DNA of 64,000 nucleotides from Haliotis rubra (Eukaryota). The translations under genes were made by a program, and so were the position numbers. This document shows positions 9,006-60,567 of this stretch, piece by piece. The stretch covers positions 1,302,001 through 1,366,000 of the forward strand of contig NW_025766002.1 in the NCBI RefSeq assembly GCF_003918875.1, given 5' to 3'. The number at the start of each line of letters is the position of its first letter. The stretch's first letter is position 1. The notes beneath the pieces are model-generated. The model was given only the letters and a program-made list of their open reading frames with translations. It searched no databases and was not told the origin of the DNA.

Positions 9006-10457
9006 ATGAGTGTCCAAAGAGCTGTTTTGTTCTGGATTGTTGGGACTTTTGTTATCTGCGAGTGTGCAGAGAAACCCCATATTGTGTTTATCGTAGCTGA
9101 TGACCTCGGATGGAACGATGTCGGATTCCGGAACCCTCAAATGATCACCCCTAACCTGGACAGACTGGCCAAAGCTGGTGTCATCCTCAACTCATCTTAC
9201 GTCCAGCCTCTATGCTCGCCTTCCAGAAGTTGTTTCATGTCGGGATATTTCCCTTATCACACTGGTCTACAAGATAGCGTTGTTAAGATAAACGCAGCAA
9301 AATTCCTTCCGGCTAACTTAACAACAATGCCACAGAAACTGAAACAACTTGGCTATGATGCTCACATGGTTGGGAAGTGGCATATTGGCTTCTGTAACTG
9401 GCGGTATACACCTACAGAGAGAGGCTTTGACTCCTACCTTGGATATTACACTGGTGATGAGGACTATTTTACTCGCATGGCACACAATAAGAATGGTACA
9501 GAGGGATTTGATTTTCACTTCAACAAAACTGCCTATAGAGATGACAATGGAACCTATTCTCTGCACATGTGTTTGCCAACAAGGCTGTTGAAATCATTGA
9601 AAACCACGACAATAGTAAGCCACTTTATCTATACCTTCCGTTCCAGGCTGTACATTTACCTCTTGAAGTTCCACCAAAATATGAAAACATGTACAAGAAC
9701 ATAGAAACCATAAATAGAAGGATCTATTGTGGAATGGTAACTGCGTTAGACGAAGCTGTAGGAAATATCACGAAGGCATTAGAAGAAAAAGGTCTCATGG
9801 ACAATCTATTGTTGGTCTTTACAACTGATAATGGTGGCCCTACTTTTGTTGCTGCCAATAACCTGCCCTTACGAGGAGCCAAAAATACTCTCTGGGAAGG
9901 GGGAACGAAAGGGACTGGATTCATCTACAGTAAATCCCTTCTCAAGAAGACGGGCTACCTCAACACTGGAATGATGCATGCAGTGGACTGGTACCCGACA
10001 TTGGTGGAGCTGGCTGGTGGAGAGAACACAGATCCCAACATGGACGGCATCAGTCAGTTCGACATGCTCATCAATGGTGGACCCAGCAAGCGGAAATGAG
10101 TTCGTCTACAACATCTATGACATAAAGGATGCAGCTGCCATAAGATACGGAGATCTCAAGCTCATGCAAGGGAGTCCAGGAGATCACAACGGTTGGGCAC
10201 CTTTGCCACATCTAGGAATAGATGAAGGTTTCTATGAAGCTGATAAGCAAACATTCCCTCCATTCATGCTCTACAACATTACTGCAGATCCAACCGAACA
10301 CTTCGACCTCTCAACTAAGTATCCTGATCTACTAGACATGATGAAGAAGAGGCTAGAGAACTGGAAGAAATCACGAGTTCCGGCACAAGACAATTCTCCT
10401 GATCCTGCAGCTAACCCCAAATACTTCGGTGGTATTTGGAGTCCAGGCTGGTGCTGA
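9006..10457 (+). pseudogene. Arylsulfatase B-like copy 2, full length but with two frameshifts (pseudogene or assembly error)
   Basis: Signal peptide MSVQRAVLFWIVGTFVICEC, then ADDLG, CSPSR, GKWHIG, DNGG and WSPGWC. Relative to paralogs there is an extra CT at 9561-9562 and an extra base at about 10093-10096. Confidence 0.88.
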
Positions 10458-10821
10458 TATTCAAAATACAAACTGTCTCACGGACGGAAATGGGGCTTCA
10501 TTTGTATTCAAAAAGAGAAAGCAAATTATACTGTTAATGTTGCCTTACTTGAAATATGTATAAACCGGATAAAATAGGATAACAGAAAAATGATTGGCTT
10601 GTCAAATCATTGTTGTCTCAAGTTGGGTTATTCTATTATAGAGGGTCTCGGGAACAGACAGGCGTGACCACAGATACAGTTCATCTTGACAGGACATCAA
10701 GTGAAGATTCGTTATCCTGTGTTTCATGTAACAAACTAAATCCAAATTAGAATATATTCAAATTAATTACGCCAGAATGAAATACACTTATCATCAACAT
10801 TGTTTTGACAGTATTCAGGTA

Positions 10822-11152
10822 TAACACATGTTGTATTTGGGATTACACTTTCTCAGTAAAGTACAGATTCTAGTACTTTTGTTTGCTTGAGTGCCATCCG
10901 GGATTCGAACCCTCACTCTGGTCAGGCACCCAATCGCCAGCACAGAAAGTTATGCGCCGTCTAACCCACTCAGCCAGCGCAGTTTCCAAAAAAATGGAAG
11001 TCGGACAACTGGTAATCTAGACCACGGGCTTTGTGTACCCGTCTGCTTAGTGTAAATAGCCACGGCTCCCACTGCCCAAAGCTATGAGTACACATTTAGA
11101 AAGTGGTCAAATGTAACACATGCTATATTTGGGATTACACTTTCTCAGTAAA
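10822..11152 (-). repeat. tRNA-like (long-arm) derived repeat bracketed by about 40-bp direct repeats
   Basis: Minus strand 10891-10980 reads gcgctggctgagtgggttag...ggttcgaatcccggatggca (A and B boxes). taacacatg.t.tatttgggattacactttctcagtaaag occurs at about 10822 and about 11115. Confidence 0.6.
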
Positions 11153-11347
11153 GCGAGCCGTGCCAATTTACACTTACACTTACAATGTGCACTAACCTGC
11201 ATTGACGCATAATGTATACCCCGTCAGCACCAGAAGATAACCAGTCTCGATTATACACATAAACAGATTCCATTGGGTTTAAAAGACAAAAGAAGAGGCG
11301 AAATTATTTCAGTGGATCACTTAAAATCTTATAAAATGTTCTGGTTT

Positions 11348-12655: not shown

Positions 12656-13490
12656 TCATGTGTTTTTGGGGATCAAATACACGGCGGATAAGGTAAAAAA
12701 TGTAACAAAAGGATCATCGGAACAACGTAACAACTTTTTCATCACAATATACTCAACAAAATAACTATCATGCAATCCTTTCGTAGTTCCATAACCGGTC
12801 CGGGACGCTTTCACCGCTCTCCACGTACTCTCAGTTTTATTGGTACACGCACCATTCTCTGCATTCACAAATTCCTTACTATGATTCACTGTCACATGCT
12901 CATATCCCATCTCATTCAGTCTGGCATACGCCTTCCAACAATCAGAATGAATTACTGATTCCAGTCGCACCTACTTTCTCAAAAGGGTATCCGCATCACG
13001 CTCTACAACTTCCAAAAACATCCTGTTACTTTCCTTCTCGATACCCCCAAACACCCACACACCATCCACTCGCCTTCCTCGATGAAACTTGCGCTTCCCA
13101 AACTTACTCTCATCAATCTCCACTTCAATCCCTGGCCCACCTATCATCTCATTCTCCTCTTCCATCACAAACAAACACACATCTCTGCAATAATTAAACC
13201 AGTCAACTAAAGTATGATCCGACCCCAGACGCAACTGCTTTTTCACAAAATTCTCTCTCACTTGATAAACCCAATAAAATGTCAATTTCATAAATTTACT
13301 AACGGACAAATGATAATTTAAAAAACAAGAATCACGCTTTGCTACAATCTTATAATTGCATTTTTTATTCGAACAACGCCACACATACCCCTCACTCCGA
13401 CTGGAATCCTTTCGCTTCCCGATACTACCACTGTCAAACCTCACACACTTCCCACTGAAATCTCCAATCAAACGAGCTATATAGAATACA
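12656..13490 (-). pseudogene. Merlin/IS1595-family DDE transposase with an in-frame stop
   Basis: WRCSNKKC zinc-ribbon half, VEIDESKFGKRKFHRGR..G.WVFGGIE, IHSDCWKAY, H.TVNHS..FV and TNKTESTW. An in-frame TAG at 12971-12973 separates ORFs 12971-13687 and 12656-12970. Confidence 0.9.
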
Positions 13491-13765
13491 TTTCTACTTC
13501 CGGGTCGGGGACCCGTAAAGTGCAGCTTTCCCGCGTTTTTGTTCTTATTCCATGCAACGTGATGTATTATGGTTGCTATGATACATAGGTTTTGTAAATA
13601 CACTTTGTTCCTAACATTTGCATAGATTCTGTGGGGTACGTCTTGACAGGTGAAATATCCAGCTGGTAATCTAAAAGAATGTGTCACCCAGGCACGCCAT
13701 GATATGTGTTATCTTATAGAAACCTTTAAATAGAAGCACACTGTACCACACTGAGCAGAAGCAAA

Positions 13766-15208
13766 ATGAGTTTCCTAAGAGCTGTATTTATTGTTTTTGC
13801 TTTTGTAATATGTGAGTGTGCAGAGAAACCTCACATTGTGTTTATCGTAGCTGATGACCTCGGATGGAACGACGTCGGATTTCGAAACCCTCAAATGATC
13901 ACTCCTAACCTGGACAGACTGGCAAAAGCGGGAGTCATCCTAAACTCTTCTTACGTCCAGCCTCTATGTTCGCCCTCCAGAAGCTGCTTCATGTCGGGAT
14001 ATTTCCCTTATCACACTGGACTACAAGATAGCGGTATTCCGATAGACGCAGCAAAATTCCTTCCCGCCAATCTAACAACGATCCCACAGAAACTGAAACA
14101 ACTTGGTTATGATGCTCACATGATTGGAAAGTGGCATTTAGGTTTCTGTAACTGGAAGTATACACCTACAGAGAGAGGCTTTGACTCCTACCTTGGATAT
14201 TACTCTGGTGATGAAGAATATTATAGTCACATGGCTCTGAATCGTAACGGTACAGAGGGATTTGATTTTCACTTCAACAAGACTGCCTTTCGAGACGACA
14301 ATGGGATCTACTCTGCAAATGAGTTCACTAATAGGGCTGTTCAAATCATTGAGGGCCATAACAACAGTAAGCCACTTTATCTGTACCTTCCATTCCAGTC
14401 TGTACATATACCTCTTGAAGTTCCAGCTAAATATGAAAACATGTACAAGAACATTGAAAACCAAAACAGAAGAATATATTGTGGAATGGCGACTGCGTTA
14501 GATGAGGCTGTGGGAAATATCACTAAGGCATTAGAAGACAAAGGTCTCATGGACAATCTATTGGTGGTCTTTACAACAGATAATGGGGGTCCCACATTTG
14601 TTGCTGCCAATAACTTGCCTTTACGAGGAGCCAAAAATACTCTCTGGGAAGGGGGAACGAAAGGAACTGGATTCATCTACAGTAAATCTCTTCTCAAGAA
14701 GACGGGCTACCTCAACACTGGAATGATGCATGCTGTGGACTGGTACCCGACATTGGTGGAGCTGGCTGGTGGAGAGAACACAGATCCCAACATGGACGGA
14801 GTCAGTCAGTACGACATGCTCATCAATGGTGGACCCAGCAAGCGAAATGAGTTCGTCTACAACATCTATGACGAGAGAGAAGCAGCTGCAATCAGGTACG
14901 GAGATCTCAAACTCATGCAAGGGAGTCCAGGAGCTCACAGTGGTTGGGCACCTTTGCCACATCTGGGAATAGATGAAGGTGTCTATGAAGCTGATAAGCA
15001 AACATTTCCTCCATTCATGCTCTACAACATTACTGCAGATCCAACCGAACACTTCGACCTCTCAGCCAAGTATCCTGATCTACTAGAAATGATGAAGAAG
15101 AGGCTAGAGAACTGGAAGAAGTCTCGTGTTCCACCACAGGACACTACCGCTGTGCCTGCAGCGAACCCAAAGTACTTCGGTGGTGTATGGAGTCCTGGGT
15201 GGTGTTGA
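13766..15208 (+). CDS. Arylsulfatase B-like copy 3 (480 aa, intact, intronless CDS)
   Basis: Signal peptide, KPHIVFIVADDLG, formylglycine motif CSPSR, GKWHLG, SVH, DNGG, RGAK, several N-glycosylation sequons and C-terminal WSPGWC. Confidence 0.95.
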   Translation: MSFLRAVFIVFAFVICECAEKPHIVFIVADDLGWNDVGFRNPQMITPNLDRLAKAGVILNSSYVQPLCSPSRSCFMSGYFPYHTGLQDSGIPIDAAKFLPANLTTIPQKLKQLGYDAHMIGKWHLGFCNWKYTPTERGFDSYLGYYSGDEEYYSHMALNRNGTEGFDFHFNKTAFRDDNGIYSANEFTNRAVQIIEGHNNSKPLYLYLPFQSVHIPLEVPAKYENMYKNIENQNRRIYCGMATALDEAVGNITKALEDKGLMDNLLVVFTTDNGGPTFVAANNLPLRGAKNTLWEGGTKGTGFIYSKSLLKKTGYLNTGMMHAVDWYPTLVELAGGENTDPNMDGVSQYDMLINGGPSKRNEFVYNIYDEREAAAIRYGDLKLMQGSPGAHSGWAPLPHLGIDEGVYEADKQTFPPFMLYNITADPTEHFDLSAKYPDLLEMMKKRLENWKKSRVPPQDTTAVPAANPKYFGGVWSPGWC

Positions 15209-17763: not shown

Positions 17764-17898
17764 CTGGAAAGTGTCGATGTAAGCATTCCTTCCAAAGATA
17801 AGAATTTAAACTGACAAAAGTAAGGTTAGTCACATGTTATGTTATCTTTGAAACAACCTTATAAACGAATGCGTTTTAAAGCACATGTTAGACACAAC
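17764..17898 (+). promoter_or_regulatory. Conserved upstream block of copy 4 (two GATA sites plus TATA)
   Basis: AGATAAG at about 17796, GTTATCT at 17841 and TATAAA at about 17860. The block is colinear with the upstream regions of copies 6-11. Confidence 0.55.
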
Positions 17899-31751: not shown

Positions 31752-33194
31752 ATGAATTTCACATCAGCTGTGTGCCTTTTTGTTACTGTAGTTCTCTCTG
31801 TGTGTGCAGAGAAACCTCACATTATATTTATAGTTGCTGATGACCTTGGATGGAATGATGTTGGATTCCGGAACCCTCAAATGATCACACCTAACCTGGA
31901 CAGACTGGCCAAAGCGGGAGTCATCCTCAACTCTTCTTATGTCCAGCCTGTGTGTTCGCCCACAAGAAATTGCTTCATGTCAGGATATTTCCCCTATCAT
32001 ACTGGACTACAAGATGACATTATTGATGTAAATGAAGCGAAACACCTACCGGTCAACCTAACAACAATCCCACAGAAACTGAAACAACTTGGCTATGATA
32101 CCCACATGGTTGGGAAGTGGCATCTTGGCTTCTGTAACTGGAAGTATACACCCACAGAAAGAGGCTTTGACTCCTTTCTTGGATATTACTCTGGTGCTGA
32201 AGGCTATTTTAACCACACGCGAAGGGGAGGACGTGATGAAGTAGGACTGGATTTTCGCTATAACAAGACTGTCAATAGAGACGCCAATAGAACCTGTTCT
32301 ACACGCGTATTTATGCACAGAGCTATTGAAATCATTCAGAACCACGACAACAGTAAACCACTTTATCTCTATCTTCCATTTCAGTCTGTACATGCACCTC
32401 TGGAAGTTCCACCTAAATTTGAAAACATGAACAAGAACATAGAAAACATAAGAAGAAGGATCTATTGTGGAATGGTGAGTATGTTAGACGACGCTGTTGG
32501 TAATATCACTGAGGCATTAGAAGAAAAAGGTCTCATGGACAATCTATTGTTGGTCTTTACAACTGATAATGGTGGGCCTACATATACAGCATCTAATAAC
32601 TTGCCTTTACGCGGCGCCAAAAATACTCTCTGGGAAGGGGGCACAAAAGGAGCTGGATTCATCTACAGTAAAACCCTTCTCAAGAAGACGGGCTACCTCA
32701 ACACTGGAATGATGCATGCTGTGGACTGGTACCCGACATTGGTGGAGCTGGCTGGTGGAGAGAACGCAGATCCCAACATAGACGGAGTCAGTCAGTATGA
32801 CATGCTCATCAATGGTGGACCCAGCAAGCGAAATGAATTCGTCTACAACATCTATGATGAAAGGGAAGCAGCTGCTATCAGGTACGGAGATCTCAAGCTC
32901 ATGCAAGGGAGTCCAGGAGATCACAACGGTTGGGCTCCTTTGCCACATCTGGGAATTGATGAAGGTGTCTATGAAGCTGATAACCAAGTGTTCCCTCCCT
33001 TCATGCTCTACAACATTACTGCAGATCCAACGGAACACTTCGACCTCTCAGCCAAGTACCCTGATGTACTGGACATGATGAAGAAGAGGCTGGAGAACTG
33101 GAAGAAATCCCGTGTCCCGCCCCAAGACCCTTCTCCTGTGCCAAGAGCGAACCCGAAATACTATGGTGGTGTTTGGAGTCCTGGGTGGTGTTGA
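31752..33194 (+). CDS. Arylsulfatase B-like copy 6 (480 aa)
   Basis: ATG at 31752 (caacATG), signal peptide, CSPTR motif, all other motifs intact. Confidence 0.95.
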   Translation: MNFTSAVCLFVTVVLSVCAEKPHIIFIVADDLGWNDVGFRNPQMITPNLDRLAKAGVILNSSYVQPVCSPTRNCFMSGYFPYHTGLQDDIIDVNEAKHLPVNLTTIPQKLKQLGYDTHMVGKWHLGFCNWKYTPTERGFDSFLGYYSGAEGYFNHTRRGGRDEVGLDFRYNKTVNRDANRTCSTRVFMHRAIEIIQNHDNSKPLYLYLPFQSVHAPLEVPPKFENMNKNIENIRRRIYCGMVSMLDDAVGNITEALEEKGLMDNLLLVFTTDNGGPTYTASNNLPLRGAKNTLWEGGTKGAGFIYSKTLLKKTGYLNTGMMHAVDWYPTLVELAGGENADPNIDGVSQYDMLINGGPSKRNEFVYNIYDEREAAAIRYGDLKLMQGSPGDHNGWAPLPHLGIDEGVYEADNQVFPPFMLYNITADPTEHFDLSAKYPDVLDMMKKRLENWKKSRVPPQDPSPVPRANPKYYGGVWSPGWC

Positions 33195-40042: not shown

Positions 40043-41482
40043 ATGAATTACATATCATTTGTGTGCCTTATCGTGACCTCAGTCGTCTGTGAATGTGCAG
40101 AGAAACCTCACATTATATTTATTGTCGCCGATGACCTGGGATGGAACGATGTTGGCTATCGGAATCCTCAAATGATCACACCTAACCTGGACAGACTGGC
40201 CAAAGCGGGAGTCATCCTCAACTCTTCCTACGTCCAGCCTTTGTGTTCACCCTCCAGAAACTGCTTTATGTCGGGATATTTCCCCTATCACACTGGACTA
40301 CAGGATGACGTTATTATCGTAAACGAAGCAAAACACCTACCGGCCAATCTAACAACAATCCCTCAGAAACTGAAACAACTTGGCTATGATGCTCACATGG
40401 TTGGGAAGTGGCATCTTGGCTTCTGTAACTGGAAGTATACACCCACAGAAAGAGGCTTTGACTCCTATCTTGGATACTACTCTGGTGCAGAGGAGTATTT
40501 TACCCACATCAATCAGAGATCAAGCGAAGTGGGGCTGGATTTTCGCTATAACAAGACTGTGCATAGAGACGCCAATGGAACGTATTCTGCTAATGTGTTT
40601 GCAGACAGAGCTATTGAAATCATTAGAAGTCATGACAACAGTAAGCCACTTTATCTGTACCTTCCATTCCAGTCGGTACATGCACCTCTTGAGGTTCCTC
40701 CTAAATATGAAAACATGTACAAGAACATAGAAACCATAAGCAGAAGGGTCTATTGTGGAATGGTGAGTGCGTTAGACGAAGCTGTTGGTAATATCACTCA
40801 GGCATTAGAAGAAAAAGGTCTCATGGACAATCTACTGTTGGTCTTTACAACAGATAATGGTGGGCCTACATATACAGCATCTAATAACTTGCCTTTACGC
40901 GGCGCCAAAAATACTCTCTGGGAAGGGGGAACGAAAGGAACTGGATTCATCTACAGTAAAAACCTTCTGAAGAAGACAGGCTACCTCAACACTGGAATGA
41001 TGCATGCTGTGGACTGGTACCCGACCTTGGTGGAGTTGGCTGGTGGAGAAAACACAGATCCCAACATGGACGGAGTCAGTCAGTACGACATGCTCATCAA
41101 TGGTGGACCCAGCAAGCGGAATGAGTTCGTCTACAACATCTATGACGACAGGGAAGCAGCAGCAATCAGGTACGGAGATCTCAAACTCATGCAAGGGAGT
41201 CCAGGAGATCACAATGGTTGGGCTCCTTTGCCACATCTAGGAATAGGTGAAGGTGTCTATGAAGCTGATAACCAAACATTCCCTCCCTTCATGCTCTACA
41301 ACATTACTGCAGATCCAACCGAACACTTCGACCTCTCAGCCAAGTACCCTGATCTACTGGACATGATGAAGAAGAGGCTGGAGAACTGGAAGAAATCCCG
41401 TGTCCCGGCCCAGGACCCTTCTCCTGTTCCAAGAGCGAACCCGAAATACTATGGTGGTGTTTGGAGTCCTGGATGGTGCTAA
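40043..41482 (+). CDS. Arylsulfatase B-like copy 8 (479 aa)
   Basis: ATG at 40043, all motifs intact, sister of copy 7. Confidence 0.95.
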   Translation: MNYISFVCLIVTSVVCECAEKPHIIFIVADDLGWNDVGYRNPQMITPNLDRLAKAGVILNSSYVQPLCSPSRNCFMSGYFPYHTGLQDDVIIVNEAKHLPANLTTIPQKLKQLGYDAHMVGKWHLGFCNWKYTPTERGFDSYLGYYSGAEEYFTHINQRSSEVGLDFRYNKTVHRDANGTYSANVFADRAIEIIRSHDNSKPLYLYLPFQSVHAPLEVPPKYENMYKNIETISRRVYCGMVSALDEAVGNITQALEEKGLMDNLLLVFTTDNGGPTYTASNNLPLRGAKNTLWEGGTKGTGFIYSKNLLKKTGYLNTGMMHAVDWYPTLVELAGGENTDPNMDGVSQYDMLINGGPSKRNEFVYNIYDDREAAAIRYGDLKLMQGSPGDHNGWAPLPHLGIGEGVYEADNQTFPPFMLYNITADPTEHFDLSAKYPDLLDMMKKRLENWKKSRVPAQDPSPVPRANPKYYGGVWSPGWC

Positions 41483-43114: not shown

Positions 43115-43279
43115 GGAGCTGTGGGGTAGCCTAGTCGTTAAAACGTTCGCTCGTCACGCCGAAGACCCGAGTTCGATTCCCCACATGGGTATAATGTGTG
43201 AAGCCCATTTCTGGTGTCTCCCGCCCTGATATTGCTTGAATATTGCTAAAAGCGGCGTAAAACAAATCTCACTCACTCA
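43115..43279 (+). mobile_element. SINE family A (duplicated with the segment)
   Basis: Same insertion and TSD as 39052-39216. Confidence 0.9.
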
Positions 43280-46401: not shown

Positions 46402-47844
46402 ATGCATTTCACATCAACTGTATGCCTTCTTTTGGCTTCAGTTTTCTGTGAGTGTGCAGAGAAACCCCACATTGTGTTTATAGTTGCTGATGACCTCGGA
46501 TGGAATGATGTTGGATTTCGGAACCCTCAAATGATCACCCCTAACCTTGACAGACTGGCCAAAGCGGGAGTCATTCTCAACTCTTCTTATGTCCAACCTT
46601 TGTGTTCACCCTCCAGAAACTGTTTCATGTCAGGATATTTCCCCTATCACACAGGACTACAAGATGACGTTATTGTGGTAAACGAAGCAAAACACCTACC
46701 GGCCAATCTAACAACAATCCCTCAGAAACTGAAACAACTTGGCTATGACACTCACATGGTTGGGAAGTGGCATCTTGGTTTCTGTAACTGGAAGTATACA
46801 CCCACAGAGAGAGGCTTTGACTCCTATCTTGGATATTACTCTGGAATGGAGTATTATTTTAACCACACGAGAACGGAAGGCAAAGATGAAGTAGGACTGG
46901 ATTTTCGCTATAACAAGACTGCCTACAGAGACGCCAATGGAACCTATTCTGCAAACGTGTTTGCAGACAGAGCTATTGAAATCATTCAGAACCACGACAA
47001 CAGTAAGCGACTTTATCTGTACCTTCCATTCCAGTCTGTACATGCACCTCTTGAAGTTCCAGCTAAATATGAAAACATGTACAAGAACATAGAAACCATA
47101 AGCAGAAGGATCTATTGTGGAATGGTGAGTGCGTTAGACGAAGCTGTTGGTAATATCACTCAGGCATTAGAAGAAAAAGGTCTCATGGACAATCTACTGT
47201 TGGTCTTTACAACTGATAACGGTGGTCCCACGTTTAGAGCTGCTAATAACTTGCCTTTACGGGGATGCAAAAACACTCTCTGGGAAGGTGGAACGAAAGG
47301 AATTGGATTCATCTACAGTAAATCCCTTCTCAAGAAGACAGGCTACCTCAACACTGGAATGATGCATGCTGTGGACTGGTACCCGACATTGGTGGAGTTG
47401 GCTGGTGGAGAGAACACAGATCCCAACATGGACGGAGTCAGTCAGTACGACATGCTCATCAACGGCGGGCCCAGCAAGCGGAATGAGTTCGTCTACAACA
47501 TCTATGAGGACAGGGAAGCAGCTGCTATCAGGTTCGGAGATCTCAAGCTCATGCAAGGGAGTCCAGGAATTCACAATGGTTGGGCTCCTTTGCCACATCT
47601 GGGAATTGATGAAGGTGTCTATGAAGCTGATAACCTAGTGTTCCCTCCCTTCATGCTGTACAACATTACTGCAGATCCAACCGAACACTTCGACCTCTCA
47701 GCCAAGTATCCTGATCTACTGGACATGATGAAGAAGAGGCTGGAGAACTGGAAGAAATCCCGTGTCCCGGCCCAGGACCCTTCTCCTGTTCCAAGAGCGA
47801 ACCCCAAATACTATGACGGCGTATGGAGTCCTGGATGGTGTTGA
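46402..47844 (+). CDS. Arylsulfatase B-like copy 9 (480 aa)
   Basis: ATG at 46402 (caacATG), signal peptide MHFTSTVCLLLASVFCEC, all motifs intact. Confidence 0.95.
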   Translation: MHFTSTVCLLLASVFCECAEKPHIVFIVADDLGWNDVGFRNPQMITPNLDRLAKAGVILNSSYVQPLCSPSRNCFMSGYFPYHTGLQDDVIVVNEAKHLPANLTTIPQKLKQLGYDTHMVGKWHLGFCNWKYTPTERGFDSYLGYYSGMEYYFNHTRTEGKDEVGLDFRYNKTAYRDANGTYSANVFADRAIEIIQNHDNSKRLYLYLPFQSVHAPLEVPAKYENMYKNIETISRRIYCGMVSALDEAVGNITQALEEKGLMDNLLLVFTTDNGGPTFRAANNLPLRGCKNTLWEGGTKGIGFIYSKSLLKKTGYLNTGMMHAVDWYPTLVELAGGENTDPNMDGVSQYDMLINGGPSKRNEFVYNIYEDREAAAIRFGDLKLMQGSPGIHNGWAPLPHLGIDEGVYEADNLVFPPFMLYNITADPTEHFDLSAKYPDLLDMMKKRLENWKKSRVPAQDPSPVPRANPKYYDGVWSPGWC

Positions 47845-48561: not shown

Positions 48562-51085
48562 TAATAATAATAATAAATATGCATTTATAATGCGCGCAAT
48601 CCAGACAGATATGCCTGCTCAAGGCGCTACAAGGGGATTGTATAAAGATAAAAGTCAGGGAGTGTTGACTGGATTTAAATGTCACTATGATACTTGGAGA
48701 ACATATGGGTCTTTAGCCTTGATTTGAATTTCTCAAAGGTTGGACACAGTTTCAACTCTGATGGAAGTGAGTTCCAGAGGATAGGGGCAGTGCTGGAGAA
48801 GGATCTGTATCACATTGATAAATGTCTTCAGTCGATATTTAGGAACTTGGAGGAGATTTTGGTCACTTGATCGGAGTTTACGTGCTGGAGTGTGTGGAGT
48901 CAAGAGTTCAGATAGATAGTCAGGGCTGGTGTTATGGAGGCATCGATATGTGATAAAGAGAAGCTTGAACTCTATTCTAGCTTTTAATGGCAACCAGTGG
49001 AGGTCTCTGAGCACTGGTGTCATGTGCACATGTCTTGGTGTTCTTGTGATGATCTGTGCTGCAGAATTTTGCAGCACCTGTAGCTTAGATAGCAGTTTAC
49101 CACTGATGCCCTGAAGCAAACTGTTGCGGTAATCTAGTCTTGATGTTATTAGACCATGGGCAAGTACCTTTGCAACTTCTTATTAAATGTCGAATGTTGC
49201 TGATGGATCGGAGATGATAATAACAGGTTCGGCTGATGTGGGTAACCTATTTCTCCATGGATAGGTGTGCGTCCAGAAATACTCCCAGATCTTTAAGGTG
49301 GTCACTGAGAACTATTTCCGTATCCGCTATCAGAATGGATTGTTCTTCTACTCTGGCCAACTATTGCTTAGTGCCAATCAGCATCACCTCTGTTTTTTCT
49401 CCATTCAGTTTTAGCTTATTTGCTGTCATCCATGACTTAGTTGTTGCCGTACAATCAGACATGCGGTGGAAGAACTCCTGAAGGTTCTTGGGTTTGAATT
49501 TGTCCATCATTTGTGTATTGTCAGCATATCCATGGTGAAGAAGCTTGAGGTGTTGGATGATGTTAGCCAGATTTGCCGTGTACAGCGTGAAGAGTATCGG
49601 ACCTAAAACAGATCCTTGTGGAACACCACAGTGTAGTTTGACGAAATCGGATTTTTCATTGCCGATGATAACTGCTTGTCTACGATCTTCCAAGTAGGAT
49701 GAAAACCACTTGTGGCAGTTACCACGGATGCAAGATTCAACCAAAAGACGGCTTAGGAGAACTTCATGGTCGATGGTATCGAATGCCGCTGGCAGATCGA
49801 GCATGACAAGGGAAGCCATGAAGCCATCATCCAATGCAGACAGTAGGTCATTGAGGACACGTATCAGGGCTGTTTCGGTGCTGTAATATTGGCGGTATGC
49901 GGATTGGAACTTGTCAAGGATAGTATTGACAGATAGATGGACCTTTAGCCTGGTGTTGACAGCTCTTTCTAGTAGCTTGGACAGGAAGGAAAGGTTGGAC
50001 ACAAGTCGGAAGTTCTTAGGGTCATTAGGATCCAAGTTCGGCTTTTTGAGGTGAGGTCTCACAACTGCCTGTTTAAAGTGAGAAGGAAATATTCCAGATT
50101 TCAGGCTCATGTTTACAATTTCTGTTATGATAGGAAGCAGCTGATCTAGTAGCTGCAACAGAATCGCTGTTGGGATCGGGTCAAGGTCACACGTTGTAGG
50201 CTTGGGAGCAGTTATGAGGTCAGAAATCTCATTAGAGGAGAACGGATGAAAGTTAGTAAGTGGTTCACCACTGAAATTCTGTGATGATATGAGATATGAT
50301 ATGTGTTCAGCTTGTGAGTCAGTTTTGAGTGTATTTCTTATCTTGTCTATCTTGGTTATGAAGAAGACATTGAATGACTCAGCGAGGGCTTTCTGGTCTG
50401 AGAAAGAAGGGAGTCTACTATCGCTGTTCTTGCCCAGCCGTGATTTCATGAACCTGTGCATATTCCTGGGGTCTCGTTTTGAATTCTGCAGGGTATTCAG
50501 ACAGTGCTCCCGTTTAGCTTGGGATATAGCTTTAGTTGTGTTGTTTCTAGCCTGACAGTAGAGTTGCCTATGAACTTCAAGATGGGACTTACGCCATTTT
50601 CATTCAGACGTTCTTCGTAGAGATTTCGCTTCCTGTACCTGTTCATTATACCATGGAAGACCGTGACGGTGAGTTATTTTCTTCTCCGTGGGAGGGGTAT
50701 GTGTATCGAGCAGCTCATGTAGTGTCAGGTTGTACAACTGTACAAGCTGGTTACATCCTAGGGAGTATCTTTAGTCAACAAGTCTGAATATTCTAGGTCT
50801 GCCCGAAAAGCATCCATGTCAATGCTCTTCAAGCTTCTACACAGCACGTATTTGTGGTCGGGTTTTGGTTTATGAAGGTTGGTGTTAACAAGTACAAGGT
50901 GGTGATCTGACATCAGTCTGTCTTCTACTGACACGCTGGTGATGATGTTAGAGTCATCACGAGACAAAACCCAGTCGAGAATGTTTCCTGATTTGTGTGT
51001 TGCCTTATCAACGTGTTGCTGAAGACCGTGCGTATGGAGGAGAGATACGAACTTTTTCACATCAGGTTTATCTTCATAAACATCG
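48562..51085 (-). mobile_element. 5'-truncated L2/CR1-group LINE, inactive
   Basis: Endonuclease end (THKSGNILDWVL, SDHHLV), RT (FRLVSNLSFLSKLLE, QSAYR, AAFDTIDH, GVPQGSVLGP, YADN instead of YADD), L2-type C-terminus LHWLP...RKLRS and an (ATT)n tail. Absent from the paralogous flanks at about 55840 and about 61150. Confidence 0.92.
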
Positions 51086-53794
51086 TGCAAAGCAGCGACG
51101 ATAAGCTCAACTCACTCACAACTCACTCACTCACTCTGAAATGTCCATGTAGCAGAAATAGGAATGAACTGATTGTAATTTTGACAGGTGCTGCTCAGTC
51201 GGTTACAACATGTGCAAAATATCAGCTGAAGAGTTTTGTCCGTGATAACATTAACACTGTACTGATGAACTGCACTTTGAAGCAGACATAAAGTATGAAA
51301 ATGTGCGTGTCGAGAACCAGATATTCAAGAGTTCACACGTCGGTTTATGAATAACAGTCTTAAAAGTATATTAAAGATTATTTGAAGTTTCAGACAGAAT
51401 CTGAAGAAAAACTTAATAGCTCGACTAAAACCTATATCTTATTATAGAGATGGATGTCTTTAAATAATGTTGTTAAAATGGTATTTTTTACGACTATGAA
51501 CGGAAGTTGTTTCAACTTGAACACGTTAAGTAATGTATGACTTATTAATGCTGTATCTCCAGACTAAAGGGGTGTGGTTCTACATCACTTTAACTGTTAC
51601 TTATGATGCCAACATGGCTTCGCGCCGGCAGAAAATGATATCACTGTCGGCTACAGCAATGTCAGCACAAAAGCCCTGCTTCTGCAGTGAACATAAAACT
51701 CGCATCAGTATACTATCACTATTTGTAAGTGCACTAGCTGGAACCTACCCTTGAAGAATAGCTTAACAAAATACACAGCTTCCAACCCAGAAAAGAAAAA
51801 AAGCTTGAGCTGTCGAGTCACAAGAGCTGTGCTTGGTTACCATGCAGGTAGCAGAAGTACCGTAAGTCCTTAGTCATTATATACTTATGTTAAATATTTA
51901 CCTGTGATTTCTAGTTCTTTTACTGTCTATTCTGGACTCAATCACTGACTGAAAGGATGAATTAATAATCTCTATCACACGGTGATGATATCAAGTTGTA
52001 AGCAAAAAGGTGAGCGTACCCTGTCCCATCGATGACAGTACTACAAACACATGCAAAGGAACGGCAATTGTTCACCCGAACACTCAAATGTATTGCAGGT
52101 AATTTCTGTCACTCTTATATTACATTTTGAAATATTATTTCCTCCTTATTTTACAGCAAAACCTTTGAACGCTTTCCAAAGACCTTCATTGTTGTAACCC
52201 CTGTTCAAATATGACTGGCGTATGAACATCAAAACGACTTCAAGCAAGGACGACAACTCTATTGCCATTTCATTCCAACAGTCATAAACATTGCTGAAGC
52301 ACTCGAGAGTTTCTGCTGTTAAAAACAATTAAGCTGTTTTAAACAATTACAATGAAGATGATTACCAGCTGTATACCATATATTTCCAAAGGTATATTTC
52401 TAAATAAGATTATTTTCATTCCTGCTGTTATAAGTCCCCCCAAAATAAACAGGTTCAGAGTATTCTCAAATTGAAGAATACGTGGAGTGTCCAAATATGA
52501 TTTGGTTTACGGGATGTCTAGCAGTTGTCTCACCCTGCATGTTCAACATTGCTTCCATAAACCTTTAGAAATTTAAAATAAATACGTTGAAAATAGTGTG
52601 AAGGACTGCAAGATACAGAAGTTACAAAGACCTTATCAATTAGGAAATTCAGCACTTCATATAGTGGGGTTTTGTTTGTTAAATACAATTCAAATGAAAG
52701 TTACAATCTTTTCTTGACAAATTTTCCTAAACCTTTGAAGAGAGACATGTAACTACTAATATACAAATATATGGTCCCCACGTTCAGTGATAAATGGCAC
52801 ATACATAATGGAATGCAGTTTTTATTAAGTCTGTTGTGCGACATGGTGGTTTACAAATATGAAAATCAATTGTTTTGACAACGTTGAACTTGGTACTTAC
52901 AGAATTACAAAATTAAAGTAGGTCAAGCAGAGGTTATGAGAATCCACAGTACATTGTTTATGCTTATCTGAAATACTTTCAGCGTTTATAATGTTGTTAA
53001 CGGGTGCGCTCGTCACACCAAACATCCGGGCCCTATTCCCACATGGGCGATGCAAATTTCTGTCTGGTGTCCCAACCCGTGATATTGCTAAACATGGCGT
53101 TAACCCTCGCTACTCACTCACTCATTCACCCACTGCTTCAGAGCATTAGAAATTTTGGTTAATGCTTGAGACAGGGGTTTCTAATACATTGCTCGACACA
53201 GCAATTTATCTTTCTTTGTGCTTATGTTTCTAAAGTTTTTATATACCAGTACAAAAGTAAACTGTGTTTTAGACAAGAGTCAAAAGTTGATAGTACTAAT
53301 GCTTGGTTCAGTTAGATTTATTCCTCCTTTAACAAATGGCATAATACACAATGTTCATTTCTGGGAAATCAAAACACTGTGCTCATCTCTATAAATTAAG
53401 CCCGTCTGCCTACTCTCAAGCCTGTCCTCAAAAACGGGTTGGCATGTCTTTCAATTAGATTCGCTGGTGTTTTGTTCTAACATTTTCTGCATTTCTGAAA
53501 GTTACACAAACATTTGGCTGCAGTGAAAATGTCAACATGTTTCATTTTCAGTGACTAATTCAATACTTTCGTTATCATGACCGTGCAAAATTAATATTGC
53601 GTTTTTCGCGTCTACGTGTACAATCTGGATTCTTCATTTTCTGTGTGATATAATCAGTCTGGAATGTGTTGATGTACGCATTTCTTCCAATGATAAGAAT
53701 TCAAGCTGGTACAAATAAGGTAAGGCACGTGTTACGTTATCTATAAAAGTTCTCTTATATACGACTGCGTTTCACTGCATACACCAGAAACAAC

Positions 53795-55237
53795 ATGCAT
53801 TTCACATCAACGGTATGCTTTCTTTTGGCTTCAGTTCTCTGTGATTGTGCAGAGAAACCTCACATTGTGTTTATAGTTGCTGATGACCTCGGATGGAACG
53901 ATGTTGGATTCCGGAACCCTCAAATGATCACCCCTAACCTGGACAGACTGGCTACAGCGGGAGTCATCCTAAACTCTTCCTACGTCCAGCCTCTATGTTC
54001 GCCCTCAAGAAACTGCTTCATGTCAGGATATTTCCCCTATCACACAGGACTACAAGATGGCGTTGTTGGGGTAGACGAAGCAAAACACCTACCGGCCAAT
54101 CTAACAACAATCCCTCAGAAACTGAAACAACTTGGCTATGATGCTCACATGGTTGGGAAGTGGCATCTTGGTTTCTGTAACTGGCAATATACACCCACAG
54201 AGAGAGGCTTTGACTCCTACCTTGGATATTACGGTGGTGACGAAGACTATTTTAACCACTCGAGAATGGCAGTCAAAGGTGAAGTAGGACTGGATTTTCG
54301 CTATAACAAGACTGTGTATAGAGACGCCAATGGAACGTATTCTGCAAACGTGTTTGCGGACAGAGCTATTGAAATCATCGAGAACCACGACAACAGTAAG
54401 CCACTTTATCTGTACCTTCCATTCCAGTCTGTACATGCACCTCTTGAAGTTCCAGCTAAATATGAAAACATGTACAAAAACATAGAAACCATAAGCAGAA
54501 GGATCTATTGTGGAATGGTGACTGCGTTAGACGAAGCTGTTGGCAATATCACTCAGGCATTAGAAGAAAAAGGTCTCATGGACAATCTATTGTTAGTCTT
54601 TACAACTGATAACGGTGGCCCCACGTATAGAGCATCTAATAACTTGCCTTTACGGGGAGCCAAAAATACTCTCTGGGAAGGTGGGACGAAAGGAACAGGA
54701 TTCATCTACAGTAAAAACCTTCTCAAGAAGACGGGCTACCTCAACACTGGAATGATGCATGCTGTGGACTGGTACCCGACCTTGGTGGAGCTGGCTGGTG
54801 GAGAAAACACAGATCCCAACATGGACGGAGTCAGTCAGTATGACATGCTCATCAATGGTGGACCCAGCAAGCGGAATGAGTTCGTCTACAACATCTATGA
54901 CAACAGGGAAGCAGCTGCAATCAGGTACGGAGATCTCAAACTCATGCAAGGGAGTCCGGGAGATCACAATGGTTGGGCTCCTTTGCCACATCTGGGAATT
55001 GATGAACGTATCTATGAAGCTGATGACCAGAAGTTCCCTCCCTTCATGCTCTACAACATTACTGCAGATCCAACCGAACACTTCGACCTCTCAGCCAAGT
55101 ATCCTGATCTACTGGACATGATGAAGAAGAGGCTGGAGAACTGGAAGAAATCCCGTGTCCCGGCCCAGGACCCTTCTCATGTACCAAGAGCGAATCCGAA
55201 ATACTATGGCGGAGTATGGAGTCCTGGATGGTGTTGA
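53795..55237 (+). CDS. Arylsulfatase B-like copy 10 (480 aa)
   Basis: Intact ORF with signal peptide and all sulfatase motifs. Confidence 0.95.
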   Translation: MHFTSTVCFLLASVLCDCAEKPHIVFIVADDLGWNDVGFRNPQMITPNLDRLATAGVILNSSYVQPLCSPSRNCFMSGYFPYHTGLQDGVVGVDEAKHLPANLTTIPQKLKQLGYDAHMVGKWHLGFCNWQYTPTERGFDSYLGYYGGDEDYFNHSRMAVKGEVGLDFRYNKTVYRDANGTYSANVFADRAIEIIENHDNSKPLYLYLPFQSVHAPLEVPAKYENMYKNIETISRRIYCGMVTALDEAVGNITQALEEKGLMDNLLLVFTTDNGGPTYRASNNLPLRGAKNTLWEGGTKGTGFIYSKNLLKKTGYLNTGMMHAVDWYPTLVELAGGENTDPNMDGVSQYDMLINGGPSKRNEFVYNIYDNREAAAIRYGDLKLMQGSPGDHNGWAPLPHLGIDERIYEADDQKFPPFMLYNITADPTEHFDLSAKYPDLLDMMKKRLENWKKSRVPAQDPSHVPRANPKYYGGVWSPGWC

Positions 55238-58575: not shown

Positions 58576-58745
58576 CTGACTGACTGACTGAGTTTAGTTT
58601 TACGCCGCTTTTAGCAATATTCCAGCAATATCACGGCGGGGGACACCAGAAATGGGCTTCACACATTGTGCCCATGTGGGGAATCGAACCCGGGTCTCCG
58701 GCGTGACGAGCCAACGCTTTAACCACTAGACTATCCCGCCGCCCC
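58576..58745 (-). mobile_element. SINE family A, young insertion specific to the copy 11 unit
   Basis: The empty site cctactctcaagcctg is intact at about 53408-53424. Confidence 0.9.
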
Positions 58746-59124
58746 TCAAGCCTGTCCTCAAAAACGGGTTGGCATGTCTTTCAATTAAATTCGCTGGTGT
58801 TTTGTTCTAACATTTTGTGCAATTCTTAAAGTTACACAAACATTTGGCTGCAGTGAAAATGTCAACATGTTTCATTTTCAGTGACTGATTCAATACTTTC
58901 GTTATCATGACCGTGCAAAATTAATATTGCGTTTTTCGCGTCTACGAATACAATCTGGATTCTTCTTTTACTGTGTGATATAATCAGTCTGGAATGTGTC
59001 GATGTACGCATTTCTTCCAATGATAAGAATTCAAGCTGGTACAAATAAGGTAAGGCACGTGTCACGTTATCTTTAAAAGATCTCTTATATACGACTGCGG
59101 TTCACTGCATACACCAGAAACAAC

Positions 59125-60567
59125 ATGCATTTCACATCAACTGTATGCTTTCTTTTGGCTTCAGTTCTCTGTGAGTGTGCAGAGAAACCCCACATTGTTT
59201 TTATAGTTGCTGATGACCTCGGATGGAACGATGTTGGATTCCGGAACCCTCAAATGATCACACCTAACCTGGACAGACTGGCCACAGCGGGAGTCATCCT
59301 AAACTCTTCCTACGTCCAGCCTCTATGTTCGCCCTCAAGAAACTGCTTCATGTCAGGATATTTCCCCTATCACACAGGACTACAAGATGGCGTTGTTGGG
59401 GTAAACGAAGCAAAACACCTACCGGCCAATCTAACAACAATCCCTCAGAAACTGAAACAACTTGGCTATGATGCTCACATGGTTGGGAAGTGGCATCTTG
59501 GTTTCTGTAACTGGCAATATACACCCACAGAGAGAGGCTTTGACTCCTATCTTGGATATTACTCTGGTGGCGAAGACTATTTTAACCACTTGAGAATGGT
59601 AGGCAAAGGTGAAGTAGGACTGGATTTTCGCTATAACAAAACTGTGTATAGAGACGCCAATGGAACGTATTCTGCAAACGTGTTTGCGGACAGAGCTATT
59701 GAAATCATTCAGAACCACGATAACAGTAAGCCACTTTATCTCTACCTTCCATTCCAGTCTGTACATGCACCTCTTGAAGTTCCAGCTAAATATGAAAACA
59801 TGTACAAAAACATAGAAACCATAAGCAGAAGGATCTATTGTGGAATGGTGAGTGCGTTAGACGAAGCTGTTGGCAATATCACTCAGGCATTAGAAGAAAA
59901 AGGTCTCATGGACAATCTATTGTTGGTCTTTACAACTGATAATGGTGGCCCCACGTATACGGCTGCTAATAACCTGCCTTTACGAGGAGCCAAGACTACT
60001 CTCTGGGAAGGGGGAACGAAAGGAACTGGATTCATCTACAGTAAAAACCTTCTCAAGAAGACGGGCTACCTCAACACTGGAATGATGCATGCTGTGGACT
60101 GGTACCCAACTTTGGTGGAGCTGGCTGGTGGAGAGAACACAGATCCCAACATGGACGGAGTCAGTCAGTACGACATGCTCATCAATGGTGGACCCAGCAA
60201 GCGGAATGAGTTCGTCTACAACATCTATGACGACAGTGAAGCAGCTGCAATCAGGTACGGAGATCTCAAACTCATGCAAGGAAGTCCAGGAACTCACAAT
60301 GGTTGGGCTCCTTTGCCACATCTGGGAATTGATGAAGGTATCTATGAAGCTGATAACCAAGTGTTCCCTCCCTTCATGCTCTACAACATTACTGCAGATC
60401 CAACCGAACACTTCGACCTCTCAGCCAAGTATCCTGATCTACTGGACATGATGAAGAAGAGGCTGGTGAACTGGAAGAAATCCCGTGTCCCGGCCCAGGA
60501 CCCTTCTCCTGTTCCAAGATCGAACCCGAAATACTATGGTGGTGCATGGAGTCCTGGATGGTGTTGA
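59125..60567 (+). CDS. Arylsulfatase B-like copy 11 (480 aa)
   Basis: Intact ORF with signal peptide and all sulfatase motifs. Confidence 0.95.
   Translation: MHFTSTVCFLLASVLCECAEKPHIVFIVADDLGWNDVGFRNPQMITPNLDRLATAGVILNSSYVQPLCSPSRNCFMSGYFPYHTGLQDGVVGVNEAKHLPANLTTIPQKLKQLGYDAHMVGKWHLGFCNWQYTPTERGFDSYLGYYSGGEDYFNHLRMVGKGEVGLDFRYNKTVYRDANGTYSANVFADRAIEIIQNHDNSKPLYLYLPFQSVHAPLEVPAKYENMYKNIETISRRIYCGMVSALDEAVGNITQALEEKGLMDNLLLVFTTDNGGPTYTAANNLPLRGAKTTLWEGGTKGTGFIYSKNLLKKTGYLNTGMMHAVDWYPTLVELAGGENTDPNMDGVSQYDMLINGGPSKRNEFVYNIYDDSEAAAIRYGDLKLMQGSPGTHNGWAPLPHLGIDEGIYEADNQVFPPFMLYNITADPTEHFDLSAKYPDLLDMMKKRLVNWKKSRVPAQDPSPVPRSNPKYYGGAWSPGWC

What the first reader, a model, noticed from the sequence alone, without database searches (positions are those of the whole stretch)
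9006..60567. Hypervariable active-site-flanking segments on an invariant scaffold (repertoire-like diversification)
Seen: long stretches are identical between copies, but variation clusters at a few sites. (1) After HTGLQD: SVVKIN, SGIPID, GVIGTD, DVIAVN, DIIDVN, DVIIVN, DVIVVN, GVVGVD, GVVGVN. (2) Loop after G.E.Y: TRMAHNKNGT, SHMALNRNGT, THIKAPSDDE, NHTIRGGHGE, NHTRRGGRDE, THIHQRSSE, NHTRTEGKDE, NHSRMAVKGE, NHLRMVGKGE. (3) VH-x-P: L/I/E/A. (4) DNGGPT-xx: FV/YD/YT/FR/YR. (5) K-x-TLW: N/D/T. (6) NIY-xxxx: DEID/DIKD/DERE/DHTD/DDRE/EDRE/DNRE/DDSE. (7) SPG-x-H: A/D/I/T. Known: sites 3-5 lie directly after the conserved catalytic His, the metal-binding DN and the second Lys of S1 sulfatases. Inference: the paralogs are diversifying in substrate subsites, forming a combinatorial sulfatase repertoire. 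Even the youngest pairs (7/8, 10/11) differ at these sites.
Basis: partly seen in the sequence, partly recalled or inferred. Interest (0 to 1): 0.9.

Follow-up and report, generated by a model that had tools for sequence, protein, structure and literature searches.

The report
Abalone sulfatase gene array under diversifying selection
A blacklip abalone carries at least 15 tandem, intronless copies of an arylsulfatase-B-like enzyme whose scaffold is conserved, while about a dozen residues, most of them mapping to segments that line the pocket in related sulfatases, are under positive selection, as expected if a seaweed grazer is diversifying the substrate range of a digestive enzyme.

Summary
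The window comes from Haliotis rubra scaffold QXJH01000002.1. It holds 11 same-strand, intronless ARSB-like (S1 sulfatase) copies: 8 intact, 2 pseudogenes and 1 cut by the window edge. They belong to an array of at least 15 copies.

The scaffold is conserved by purifying selection, not by youth (whole-gene dN/dS 0.12-0.24, dS 0.08-0.53).

My own codon-model likelihood tests show about 2-3% of codons with omega of about 3-5. These are codons 92, 147/149, 156-161, 215, 279, 390 and, in H. rubra only, 413.

The signal holds up in five checks:
- using intact copies only;
- dropping the indel-bearing loop;
- giving six segments their own trees, because gene conversion is real;
- a null simulation with recombination;
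- a recombination-proof count of nucleotide states.

The separate H. rufescens array gives the same sites.

By catalytic-anchor homology, codons 215, 279 and the 146-161 segment fall on pocket-lining positions of human GALNS. The codon 92 loop matches a substrate-contact loop. Codons 390 and 413 could not be placed.

Function is untested. Mollusc ARSB expansion is already published; the site-specific, parallel diversification was not in what I searched.

The parts
1..427 (+). Copy 1: the last 141 codons plus stop. The gene starts before the window and is intact in the full scaffold (P0137).
   Evidence: tblastn; exact match of the C-terminus to P0137
9012..10457 (+). Copy 2: pseudogene or assembly error, with a +2 nt (TC) and a +1 nt (G) insertion that shift the frame between them
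   Evidence: three tblastn HSPs in different frames; indels
13766..15208 (+). Copy 3: intact, 480 aa, intronless
   Evidence: equals P0008
17899..19341 (+). Copy 4: intact, 480 aa from the Met used in the public gene model (the ORF extends upstream to 17839)
   Evidence: P0127
21371..22806 (+). Copy 5: pseudogene with no start codon, 4-nt, 4-nt and 1-nt deletions in the 5' third and stops in the signal-peptide region. It is a mosaic: it groups with copy 3 in codons 200-300 and with copy 4 in codons 300-480.
   Evidence: segment trees
31752..33194 (+). Copy 6: intact, 480 aa
   Evidence: P0131
35982..37421 (+). Copy 7: intact, 479 aa. It lies in a 4.06-kb unit (35713-39774) that is 97% identical to the unit of copy 8.
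   Evidence: (P0135)
40043..41482 (+). Copy 8: intact, 479 aa; unit 39774-43842
   Evidence: (P0002)
46402..47844 (+). Copy 9: intact, 480 aa
   Evidence: P0001
53795..55237 (+). Copy 10: intact, 480 aa. It is the numbering reference and the copy whose structure was modelled.
   Evidence: (P0133)
59125..60567 (+). Copy 11: intact, 480 aa. Its unit is 93-95% identical to that of copy 10 over about 5.3 kb.
   Evidence: (P0126)
54068..54070 (+).
   Evidence: posterior 1.0 in every run; residue counts
54233..54277 (+).
   Evidence: ordered hairpin with pLDDT about 90
54437..54439 (+).
   Evidence: posterior 0.9-0.99; anchor equals GALNS A237, a pocket residue (PMC12946951, PMC7404199)
54629..54631 (+).
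   Evidence: posterior 0.99-1.0; anchor equals GALNS S295, a pocket residue
54962..54964 (+).
   Evidence: posterior 0.92-1.0 in both species; position relative to the pocket not established
55031..55033 (+). Its three-base GTG/ACA alternative is carried between copies.

Best explanation
This is a lineage-specific tandem array of intronless genes for signal-peptide-bearing, formylglycine-type sulfatases of the ARSB kind (SulfAtlas S1_2-like) in the abalone Haliotis rubra.

The array grows and turns over by unit duplication and pseudogenisation, and short patches are exchanged between copies by gene conversion. Purifying selection holds the fold and all eleven catalytic and metal-binding residues fixed. 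Positive diversifying selection acts on about 10-13 codons. Most of these sit on the loops that follow the catalytic residues, which are the segments that recognise the leaving group in related sulfatases.

The most likely result is a set of isozymes with different substrate preferences for the sulfated polysaccharides, or other sulfated compounds, of the seaweeds the animal eats.

Shown here: the array anatomy, the selection pattern, its robustness and its recurrence in a second species.
Inferred: pocket location (by homology only), secretion into the gut, and different substrates.
For: Identity
- Pfam Sulfatase E=5e-56.
- 1FSU (human ARSB) E=3e-115.
- AlphaFold model pLDDT 94.5, with TM-score 0.90 to 1FSU.
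- All 23 intact copies keep D30 D31 C68 P70 R72 K122 H124 H214 D272 N273 K290.

Selection in H. rubra
- M0 omega is 0.215.
- With 8 intact copies, the likelihood-ratio test (LRT) is 33.9 for M1a/M2a, 42.5 for M7/M8 and 36.3 for M8a/M8.
- With six segment-specific trees, the LRT is 15.4 (p=4.5e-4) for M1a/M2a and 18.8 (p=1.4e-5) for M8a/M8.
- Without the indel-bearing loop, the LRT is 35.8 in each species.
- Twenty null simulations with recombination reached at most 13.5, against 41.8 observed.

Second species
- H. rufescens alone gives LRT 63.6 and sites 92, 93, 149, 157, 159, 160, 215, 279, 390.
- The rubra-defined sites, tested in rufescens with their own synonymous rate free, give omega 1.6-2.2 (p=0.02-0.03).

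Recombination-proof test
- First and second codon positions at the core sites carry 2.05 extra nucleotide states, against 0.79 at four-fold synonymous sites (Mann-Whitney p=3e-8, rufescens only).

Pocket mapping
- Catalytic equivalences are in PMC7404199 Table 3, and the GALNS pocket list is in PMC12946951.
- S1_19B residue F103, which contacts the -1 sugar (PMC6923384), aligns to residue 90.

Context
- ARSB proteins occur in a scallop digestive-gland proteome (PMC5159873).
Against: - No residue coordinates were available, so distances to the formylglycine were not measured. Codons 390 and 413 are not placed relative to the pocket.
- The codon models are my own implementation with naive (not Bayes) empirical posteriors.
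- Short-tract conversion below the scale of my six partitions inflates tree-based substitution counts. 28 of 39 differences between copies 7 and 8 have both states present in other copies, and codon 413 differs by three bases at once.
- The test with a free synonymous rate in H. rufescens is only modestly significant (p=0.02-0.03).
- The two species' arrays share deep ancestry, so the replication is not fully independent.
- I saw no expression, secretion or activity data.
Confidence: 0.65

Rival explanations
1. There is no adaptive diversification. The variable codons are simply unconstrained surface positions (omega about 1), and the excess above 1 is an artefact of gene conversion, multi-nucleotide changes and loop misalignment in tree-based codon models.
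For: - Recombination is real: AICc keeps improving up to 5 breakpoints.
- Under a recombining null, 4 of 20 simulations exceed the nominal 5% threshold.
- Most differences between copies 7 and 8 reuse states found in other copies.
- Sites 5 and 6 show no excess.
Against: - The observed LRTs (34-134) are far above the simulated maximum of 13.5.
- The signal survives segment-specific trees and removal of the loop.
- The count of distinct nucleotide states cannot be inflated by recombination. It is 2.6 times higher at the nonsynonymous positions of the core codons than at neutral four-fold sites.
- The same codons are recovered in the other species.
Confidence: 0.13
2. Selection is real, but the driver is not a wider range of dietary glycans. 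It could be escape from algal enzyme inhibitors, removal of sulfate from sulfated algal defence compounds, or an endogenous role such as mucus, shell matrix or glycosaminoglycan turnover.
For: - The closest animal precedent is a detoxifying sulfatase family: the three tandem glucosinolate sulfatases of Plutella, which evolved under positive selection (PMC10375594).
- Nothing in my data identifies a substrate.
- Positive selection recurring at the same few sites in two species also fits an arms race.
Against: - ARSB-type enzymes were found in a mollusc digestive-gland proteome, with a dietary reading (PMC5159873).
- Earlier unchecked notes report arrays of GH86-like and IDS-like genes in the same genome.
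- The mapped selected positions correspond to sugar-contact segments of carbohydrate sulfatases (PMC6923384, PMC12946951).
Confidence: 0.2
3. A dedicated mutational mechanism (targeted hypermutation or templated diversification) generates the hypervariable segments, as in immune-type repertoires.
For: Variation is very concentrated: codon 92 has 10 residues in 23 copies. Patchwork exchange between copies exists.
Against: - The synonymous rate at the hypervariable codons is no higher than elsewhere (0.7-1.5 times; pS 0.262 against 0.274).
- The variation is germline and differs between fixed paralogs.
- I saw no template repeats or reverse-transcriptase cassette tied to the genes. The one RVT_1 ORF is a separate retroelement in a spacer.
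Confidence: 0.02

Closest known systems
Human arylsulfatase B / N-acetylgalactosamine-4-sulfatase (PDB 1FSU; SulfAtlas subfamily S1_2)
   Same: It is the best solved-structure match (E=3e-115, 42% identity over the Foldseek structural alignment, TM-score 0.90). The catalytic and metal-binding residues are identical, and the two-subdomain fold is the same.
   Different: - The human gene is single-copy, has introns and encodes a lysosomal enzyme. Here there are 15 or more intronless tandem copies.
- The abalone proteins lack a roughly 23-residue ARSB insert after residue 370 and the Cys that aligns with residue 390.
- The substrate of the abalone enzymes is unknown.
ARSB gene duplications in molluscs (7 in the scallop Chlamys farreri, 16 in Aplysia; four proteins found in scallop hepatopancreas; PMC5159873)
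   Same: Same enzyme family and the same phylum. The same proposal has been made, that duplicated ARSB genes adapt the animal to diverse algal food.
   Different: That work reports copy numbers, a tree and general pocket variability. It does not report an intronless tandem array, codon-level selection tests, gene conversion or parallel selection at the same sites in two species.
Glucosinolate sulfatases GSS1-3 of the diamondback moth Plutella xylostella (PMC10375594)
   Same: They are tandem duplicates of an arylsulfatase gene in a herbivore. They diverged under positive selection and have different substrate ranges.
   Different: - There are three genes, not fifteen or more.
- That review derives them from a different arylsulfatase gene (Sulf C), although PMC5066984 groups them with ARSB.
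- Their role is detoxifying a plant defence, and it has been shown by experiment. Nothing here has been tested.
Bacterial carbohydrate sulfatases of algal polysaccharide utilisation loci (S1_19 carrageenan sulfatases 6PRM/6PSM, 6BIA/6B0J; PMC6923384, PMC9096561)
   Same: They are the next-best structural matches (TM-score 0.77-0.80). Specificity is set outside the conserved sulfate subsite by loops that contact the leaving-group sugar. One such contact, F103, aligns inside the hypervariable site-1 loop.
   Different: Identity is only 27-30%. They belong to a different subfamily and are bacterial. Their diversity comes from many distant subfamilies, not from one young array.

Membership tests
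S1 formylglycine-dependent sulfatases | Sulfatase domain (Pfam PF00884) above the curated threshold | tested here: met
   E=5.4e-56, 190.5 bits against a cut-off of 25
S1 formylglycine-dependent sulfatases | C-x-P-x-R signature with the cysteine that is converted to formylglycine | tested here: met
   C68-S-P70-S-R72 is present in all 23 intact copies
S1 formylglycine-dependent sulfatases | Metal-binding Asp-Asp and Asp-Asn, plus the catalytic Lys/His pairs | tested here: met
   D30 D31 K122 H124 H214 D272 N273 K290 are invariant. Equivalences to ARSB come and from PMC5159873 and PMC7404199.
S1 formylglycine-dependent sulfatases | Two-subdomain alkaline-phosphatase-like fold | tested here: met
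   AlphaFold model with pLDDT 94.5; Foldseek TM-score 0.90 to 1FSU
S1 formylglycine-dependent sulfatases | Formylglycine actually formed, and sulfate ester hydrolysis | not testable with these tools
   Needs protein chemistry and enzyme assays
ARSB subfamily (S1_2, GalNAc-4-sulfatase) | Closest characterised relative is ARSB, not another subfamily | tested here: met
   1FSU scores 389 bits; the next hit (S1_19) scores 194 bits. Public names are arylsulfatase B/I/J-like.
ARSB subfamily (S1_2, GalNAc-4-sulfatase) | Specificity for GalNAc-4-sulfate at the non-reducing end | not testable with these tools
   The positions next to the catalytic residues differ among copies, so a shared specificity should not be assumed
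Gene families under diversifying selection at ligand-contact sites | A class of codons with omega significantly above 1, robust to recombination | tested here: met
Gene families under diversifying selection at ligand-contact sites | The same sites recovered in an independent lineage | tested here: met
   H. rufescens alone gives 92, 93, 149, 157, 159, 160, 215, 279, 390. The lowest between-species dS is 0.34, and there are no one-to-one orthologs.
Gene families under diversifying selection at ligand-contact sites | Selected residues lie in the ligand-binding surface | tested here: inconclusive
   By anchor homology, 215, 278/279, 291 and the 146-161 segment map to the GALNS pocket list. The codon 92 loop maps to the GALNS 105-112 loop and to S1_19B F103. 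Codons 390 and 413 are unplaced. No coordinates were available to measure distances.

The most novel reading that the evidence does not exclude
Abalones may keep a self-renewing 'combinatorial' set of sulfatases. Unit duplication and short-tract gene conversion would keep reshuffling a handful of pocket-lining residues between copies, and diversifying selection would keep the combinations apart. On this reading, two species have independently rebuilt different sets at the same positions to track the sulfated glycans or defence chemistry of their local seaweeds. It would be an enzyme counterpart of MHC-like or resistance-gene-like evolution.
Probability: 0.25. Interest if true: 0.7.

Novelty: new member of a known kind. 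Interest (0 to 1): 0.5.

Why it matters
Very few animal enzymes that remove sulfate from algal polysaccharides have been characterised. Current knowledge of sulfatase specificity comes mostly from bacterial enzymes that are too distant from one another to compare residue by residue.

This array is a natural mutagenesis series. It offers 20 or more closely related enzymes (83-95% identical) that differ mainly at about a dozen positions, several of which map to pocket-lining segments. A small expression panel could show which residues set regio- and sugar specificity in ARSB-type sulfatases.

The array would also help answer how much of seaweed digestion in abalone, an aquaculture species, is done by the host and not by its gut microbes. 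Finally, it gives a clean case of parallel positive selection combined with gene conversion in a digestive enzyme family.

Tried and rejected
- **Residue-level 3D mapping.** Structure prediction and fold search return no coordinates or residue alignments. I used catalytic anchors plus published pocket lists instead, so codons 390 and 413 stay unplaced. A C-terminal-fragment search of solved structures gave no usable GALNS alignment.
- **First null simulation.** I reran it with single-threaded workers.
- **Literature.** Searches for an abalone-specific report of sulfatase expansion or selection found none. This is absence in the searched library only.
- **Gene structure of a more distant paralog.** P0016 was not on record.
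- **Transposon-like ORFs.** Pfam gave no family for the ORFs at 12971-13687 and 25456-25995, so I do not name them.
- **Mutational hot spot.** Rejected because synonymous rates at and around the variable codons are normal.
- **Youth of the copies as the cause of the invariant scaffold.** Rejected because dS is up to 0.53.
- **H. rufescens copies L4c and L6a.** They carry in-frame stops and were left out of all selection analyses. Their back-translated rows are also shifted after the stop.
Full report
**What is in the window**

The window has about 40% G+C and low coding density. It carries eleven homologous open reading frames on the + strand, spaced 4-9 kb apart. Each intact copy is one uninterrupted ORF of 479-480 codons from the Met used in the public gene models, so the genes are intronless.

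Copy 10 matches Pfam Sulfatase (E=5e-56). Its best solved-structure match is human arylsulfatase B, 1FSU (E=3e-115). The next matches are bacterial S1_19 carrageenan sulfatases.

A database search returned only abalone proteins above 80% identity. The window's own products lie on a 9,431,463-bp contig of Haliotis rubra. Locus look-ups place the window at roughly 1,302,001-1,366,000 of scaffold QXJH01000002.1. They also show further copies upstream (P0005, P0004, P0138 and the start of copy 1) and downstream (P0130). The array therefore has at least 15 members over about 94 kb.

Of the eleven copies in the window:
- Eight are intact.
- Copy 1 is cut by the window edge but is intact in the scaffold.
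- Copy 2 has a +2 and a +1 insertion.
- Copy 5 lacks a start codon and has three small deletions.

An N-terminal hydrophobic segment precedes the conserved mature start in every intact copy. This fits entry into the secretory pathway.

**Check of the observation**

Their pN/pS is 1.33, against 0.15 for the other 432 mature codons. pS is the same in both classes, 0.262 against 0.274.

Whole-gene dN/dS is 0.12-0.24, and dS runs from 0.08 (copies 7/8) and 0.11 (copies 10/11) up to 0.53. The invariant scaffold is therefore the product of purifying selection on fairly old duplicates, not of recent copying.

**Is it more than relaxed constraint?**

No PAML or HyPhy was available. I wrote a Goldman-Yang codon likelihood program with F3x4 frequencies and models M0, M1a, M2a, M7, M8 and M8a. 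I checked it by two routes:
- Its M0 omega (0.215) agrees with the counting estimates.
- Data simulated under the null did not produce large test statistics.

Results for H. rubra:

| Data set | Test | LRT |
|---|---|---|
| 10 copies, one tree | M2a vs M1a | 41.8 |
| 8 intact copies | M2a vs M1a | 33.9 |
| 8 intact copies | M8 vs M7 | 42.5 |
| 8 intact copies | M8 vs M8a | 36.3 |

In the 8-copy runs about 2-2.6% of codons have omega of about 5.

**Recombination**

A breakpoint scan (231 segments, AICc) keeps improving up to five breakpoints, and the segment trees conflict. Copy 5, for example, groups with copy 3 in codons 200-300 and with copy 4 in codons 300-480.

When each of six segments gets its own tree and branch lengths, the tests weaken but stay significant: M2a vs M1a 15.4 (p=4.5e-4), M8 vs M7 29.2 and M8 vs M8a 18.8 (p=1.4e-5).

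I also simulated 20 data sets under M1a on the six conflicting trees and analysed each on one tree. This inflated the statistic: 4 of 20 exceeded 5.99, with a maximum of 13.5. That is nowhere near the observed 41.8. Removing codons 147-165, where indels make the alignment uncertain, leaves an LRT of 35.8.

**Replication in a second species**

H. rufescens has a comparable array of 12 intact copies that I could fetch, two copies with in-frame stops, and several fragments. It spans about 62.49-62.63 Mb of JALGQA010000002.1.

A protein tree shows mostly species-specific clades. The lowest between-species dS is 0.34, and many within-species pairs are lower. Most of the diversification is therefore separate in the two species, whether by independent duplication or by concerted evolution.

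H. rufescens alone gives:
- M2a vs M1a LRT of 63.6.
- Selected codons 92, 93, 149, 157, 159, 160, 215, 279 and 390. This is essentially the H. rubra list of 92, 149, 156-160, 279, 390 and 413.
The synonymous rate at these sites is 0.9-1.5 times that of the rest.

Both species together (23 copies) give M2a vs M1a of 134, with omega 4.0 in 2.6% of codons.

**A test that recombination cannot inflate**

Gene conversion can move variants between copies but cannot create new nucleotide states. I compared the mean number of extra states at two kinds of position:

| Data set | Positions 1 and 2 of the ten core codons | Four-fold sites of invariant codons |
|---|---|---|
| H. rufescens only | 2.05 | 0.79 |
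| Both species | 2.6 | 1.3 |

The Mann-Whitney p is 3e-8 for H. rufescens, where the sites were defined beforehand in the other species. Relaxed constraint alone could at most equal the neutral value.

- Supported: site 1 at codon 92 (and 93 in H. rufescens); site 2 at 156-161, plus 147 and 149 in the G.E.Y motif; site 3 (215); site 4 at 279; site 7 (390).
- Not supported: site 5 (291), site 6 (369-372), codons 89-91 and 94, and 278. Their posteriors are about 0 in the pooled and H. rufescens runs. Codon 370 was flagged only in the partitioned H. rubra run.
It is suspect because copies 7 and 8 differ there by all three bases, and both versions occur in other copies.

Their amino-acid differences are enriched at the sites defined in H. 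rufescens: 3 of 12 for copies 7/8 (p=0.002) and 6 of 21 for copies 10/11 (p=1.7e-6).

**How the variation is generated**

Copies 7 and 8 sit in 4.06-kb units that are 97% identical. Copies 10 and 11 sit in units of about 5.3 kb that are 93-95% identical.

In the 7/8 unit the coding region is slightly more diverged (2.7%) than the non-coding part (2.3%), although the coding region is under purifying selection. In addition, 28 of the 39 coding differences have both states present in other copies. This indicates small patches imported from other paralogs.

The mechanism I propose is ordinary mutation, plus unit duplication, plus exchange between paralogs, filtered by selection. Nothing suggests targeted hypermutation.

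**Where the selected residues sit**

The AlphaFold model of copy 10 is confident (pLDDT 94.5, pTM 0.93) and superposes on 1FSU with a TM-score of 0.90. The site-2 loop is an ordered beta-hairpin, not a floppy tail.

I could not obtain coordinates, so the placement rests on homology:
- PMC7404199 (Table 3) equates the catalytic residues of ARSB and GALNS.
- PMC12946951 lists the pocket residues of GALNS (4FDI).
- With those anchors, codon 215 equals A237, codons 278/279 equal I294/S295, and codon 291 equals Q311.
- The pocket stretch N164-I178 falls on codons 146-161. The register rests partly on my recollection of the GALNS sequence, which the residue names in that list corroborate.
- The pocket loop R105-E112 is the loop that contains codon 92.
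- In the kappa-carrageenan sulfatase S1_19B, F103 forms part of the shelf for the -1 sugar (PMC6923384). It aligns to residue 90.
- PMC9096561 states that specificity in S1 sulfatases is set outside the conserved sulfate subsite.

Codons 390 and 413 lie in a C-terminal loop that is absent from the bacterial homologs and remain unplaced.

**Comparison with what is known**

ARSB duplication in molluscs is published in PMC5159873. That paper also reports ARSB proteins in a digestive-gland proteome and proposes adaptation to algal diets.

A tandem, positively selected arylsulfatase family in a herbivore is known from Plutella (PMC10375594).

What I did not find in the searched literature is an abalone array of this size, its lack of introns, codon-level evidence, gene-conversion mosaicism, or recurrence of the same selected sites in two species. 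I therefore file it as a new member of a known kind, of moderate interest.

**Verdict**

Diversifying selection is real at five of the seven sites, and pocket location is supported by homology for four of those five.
- Different substrate ranges remain an inference.

Noticed in passing
L011:3249-18186 (H. rubra scaffold QXJH01000002.1, about 1.02-1.05 Mb, opposite strand): A second tandem array of at least three intronless 496-aa ARSB-like genes lies about 250 kb from this one. P0012 from that array is 69% identical to copy 10. ARSB-like genes without introns are therefore not confined to one array.
   Followed up: partly
window 9012-10457: The two frameshifts of copy 2 are a TC dinucleotide duplication and one extra G. 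They could be true pseudogenising changes or indel errors of a long-read assembly. Between them the frame is lost for about 530 bases.
   Followed up: partly
window 35713-43842: In the young duplicated unit of copies 7 and 8, synonymous divergence in the gene (dS 0.08) is well above the divergence of the flanking non-coding DNA (2.3%). This fits sequence imported from other paralogs into the coding part only.
   Followed up: partly
window 29311-30356: Self-matches offset by about 170 bases, at 82-84% identity, indicate a tandem repeat of roughly six units in the long spacer between copies 5 and 6.
   Followed up: no
window 49361-50461 (-) and 48733-49119 (-), 50758-51090 (-): A reverse-transcriptase ORF (Pfam RVT_1, E=1e-26) with neighbouring ORFs on the same strand suggests a LINE-like retroelement inserted in the spacer between copies 9 and 10.
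   Followed up: partly
window 12656-13687 (-) and 25365-25995 (-): These ORFs look like transposase remnants by eye, but they had no Pfam match at the default threshold, so they remain unnamed.
   Followed up: partly
L002:6710-8091, L003:13696-13985, L004:7395-8306, L005:12777-13350 (H. rufescens): The H. rufescens array also contains a frameshifted copy and several gene fragments between intact copies. Two further copies (L004:17905-19317 and L006:677-2116) carry one in-frame stop each. This indicates birth-and-death turnover in that species as well.
   Followed up: partly
window 46306-46401, 17839-17898, 31704-31751, 35931-35981, 39992-40042: Several copies have in-frame upstream extensions of 16-32 codons before the Met used in the public gene models (some starting with TTG). 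Which start is used is unknown.
   Followed up: no
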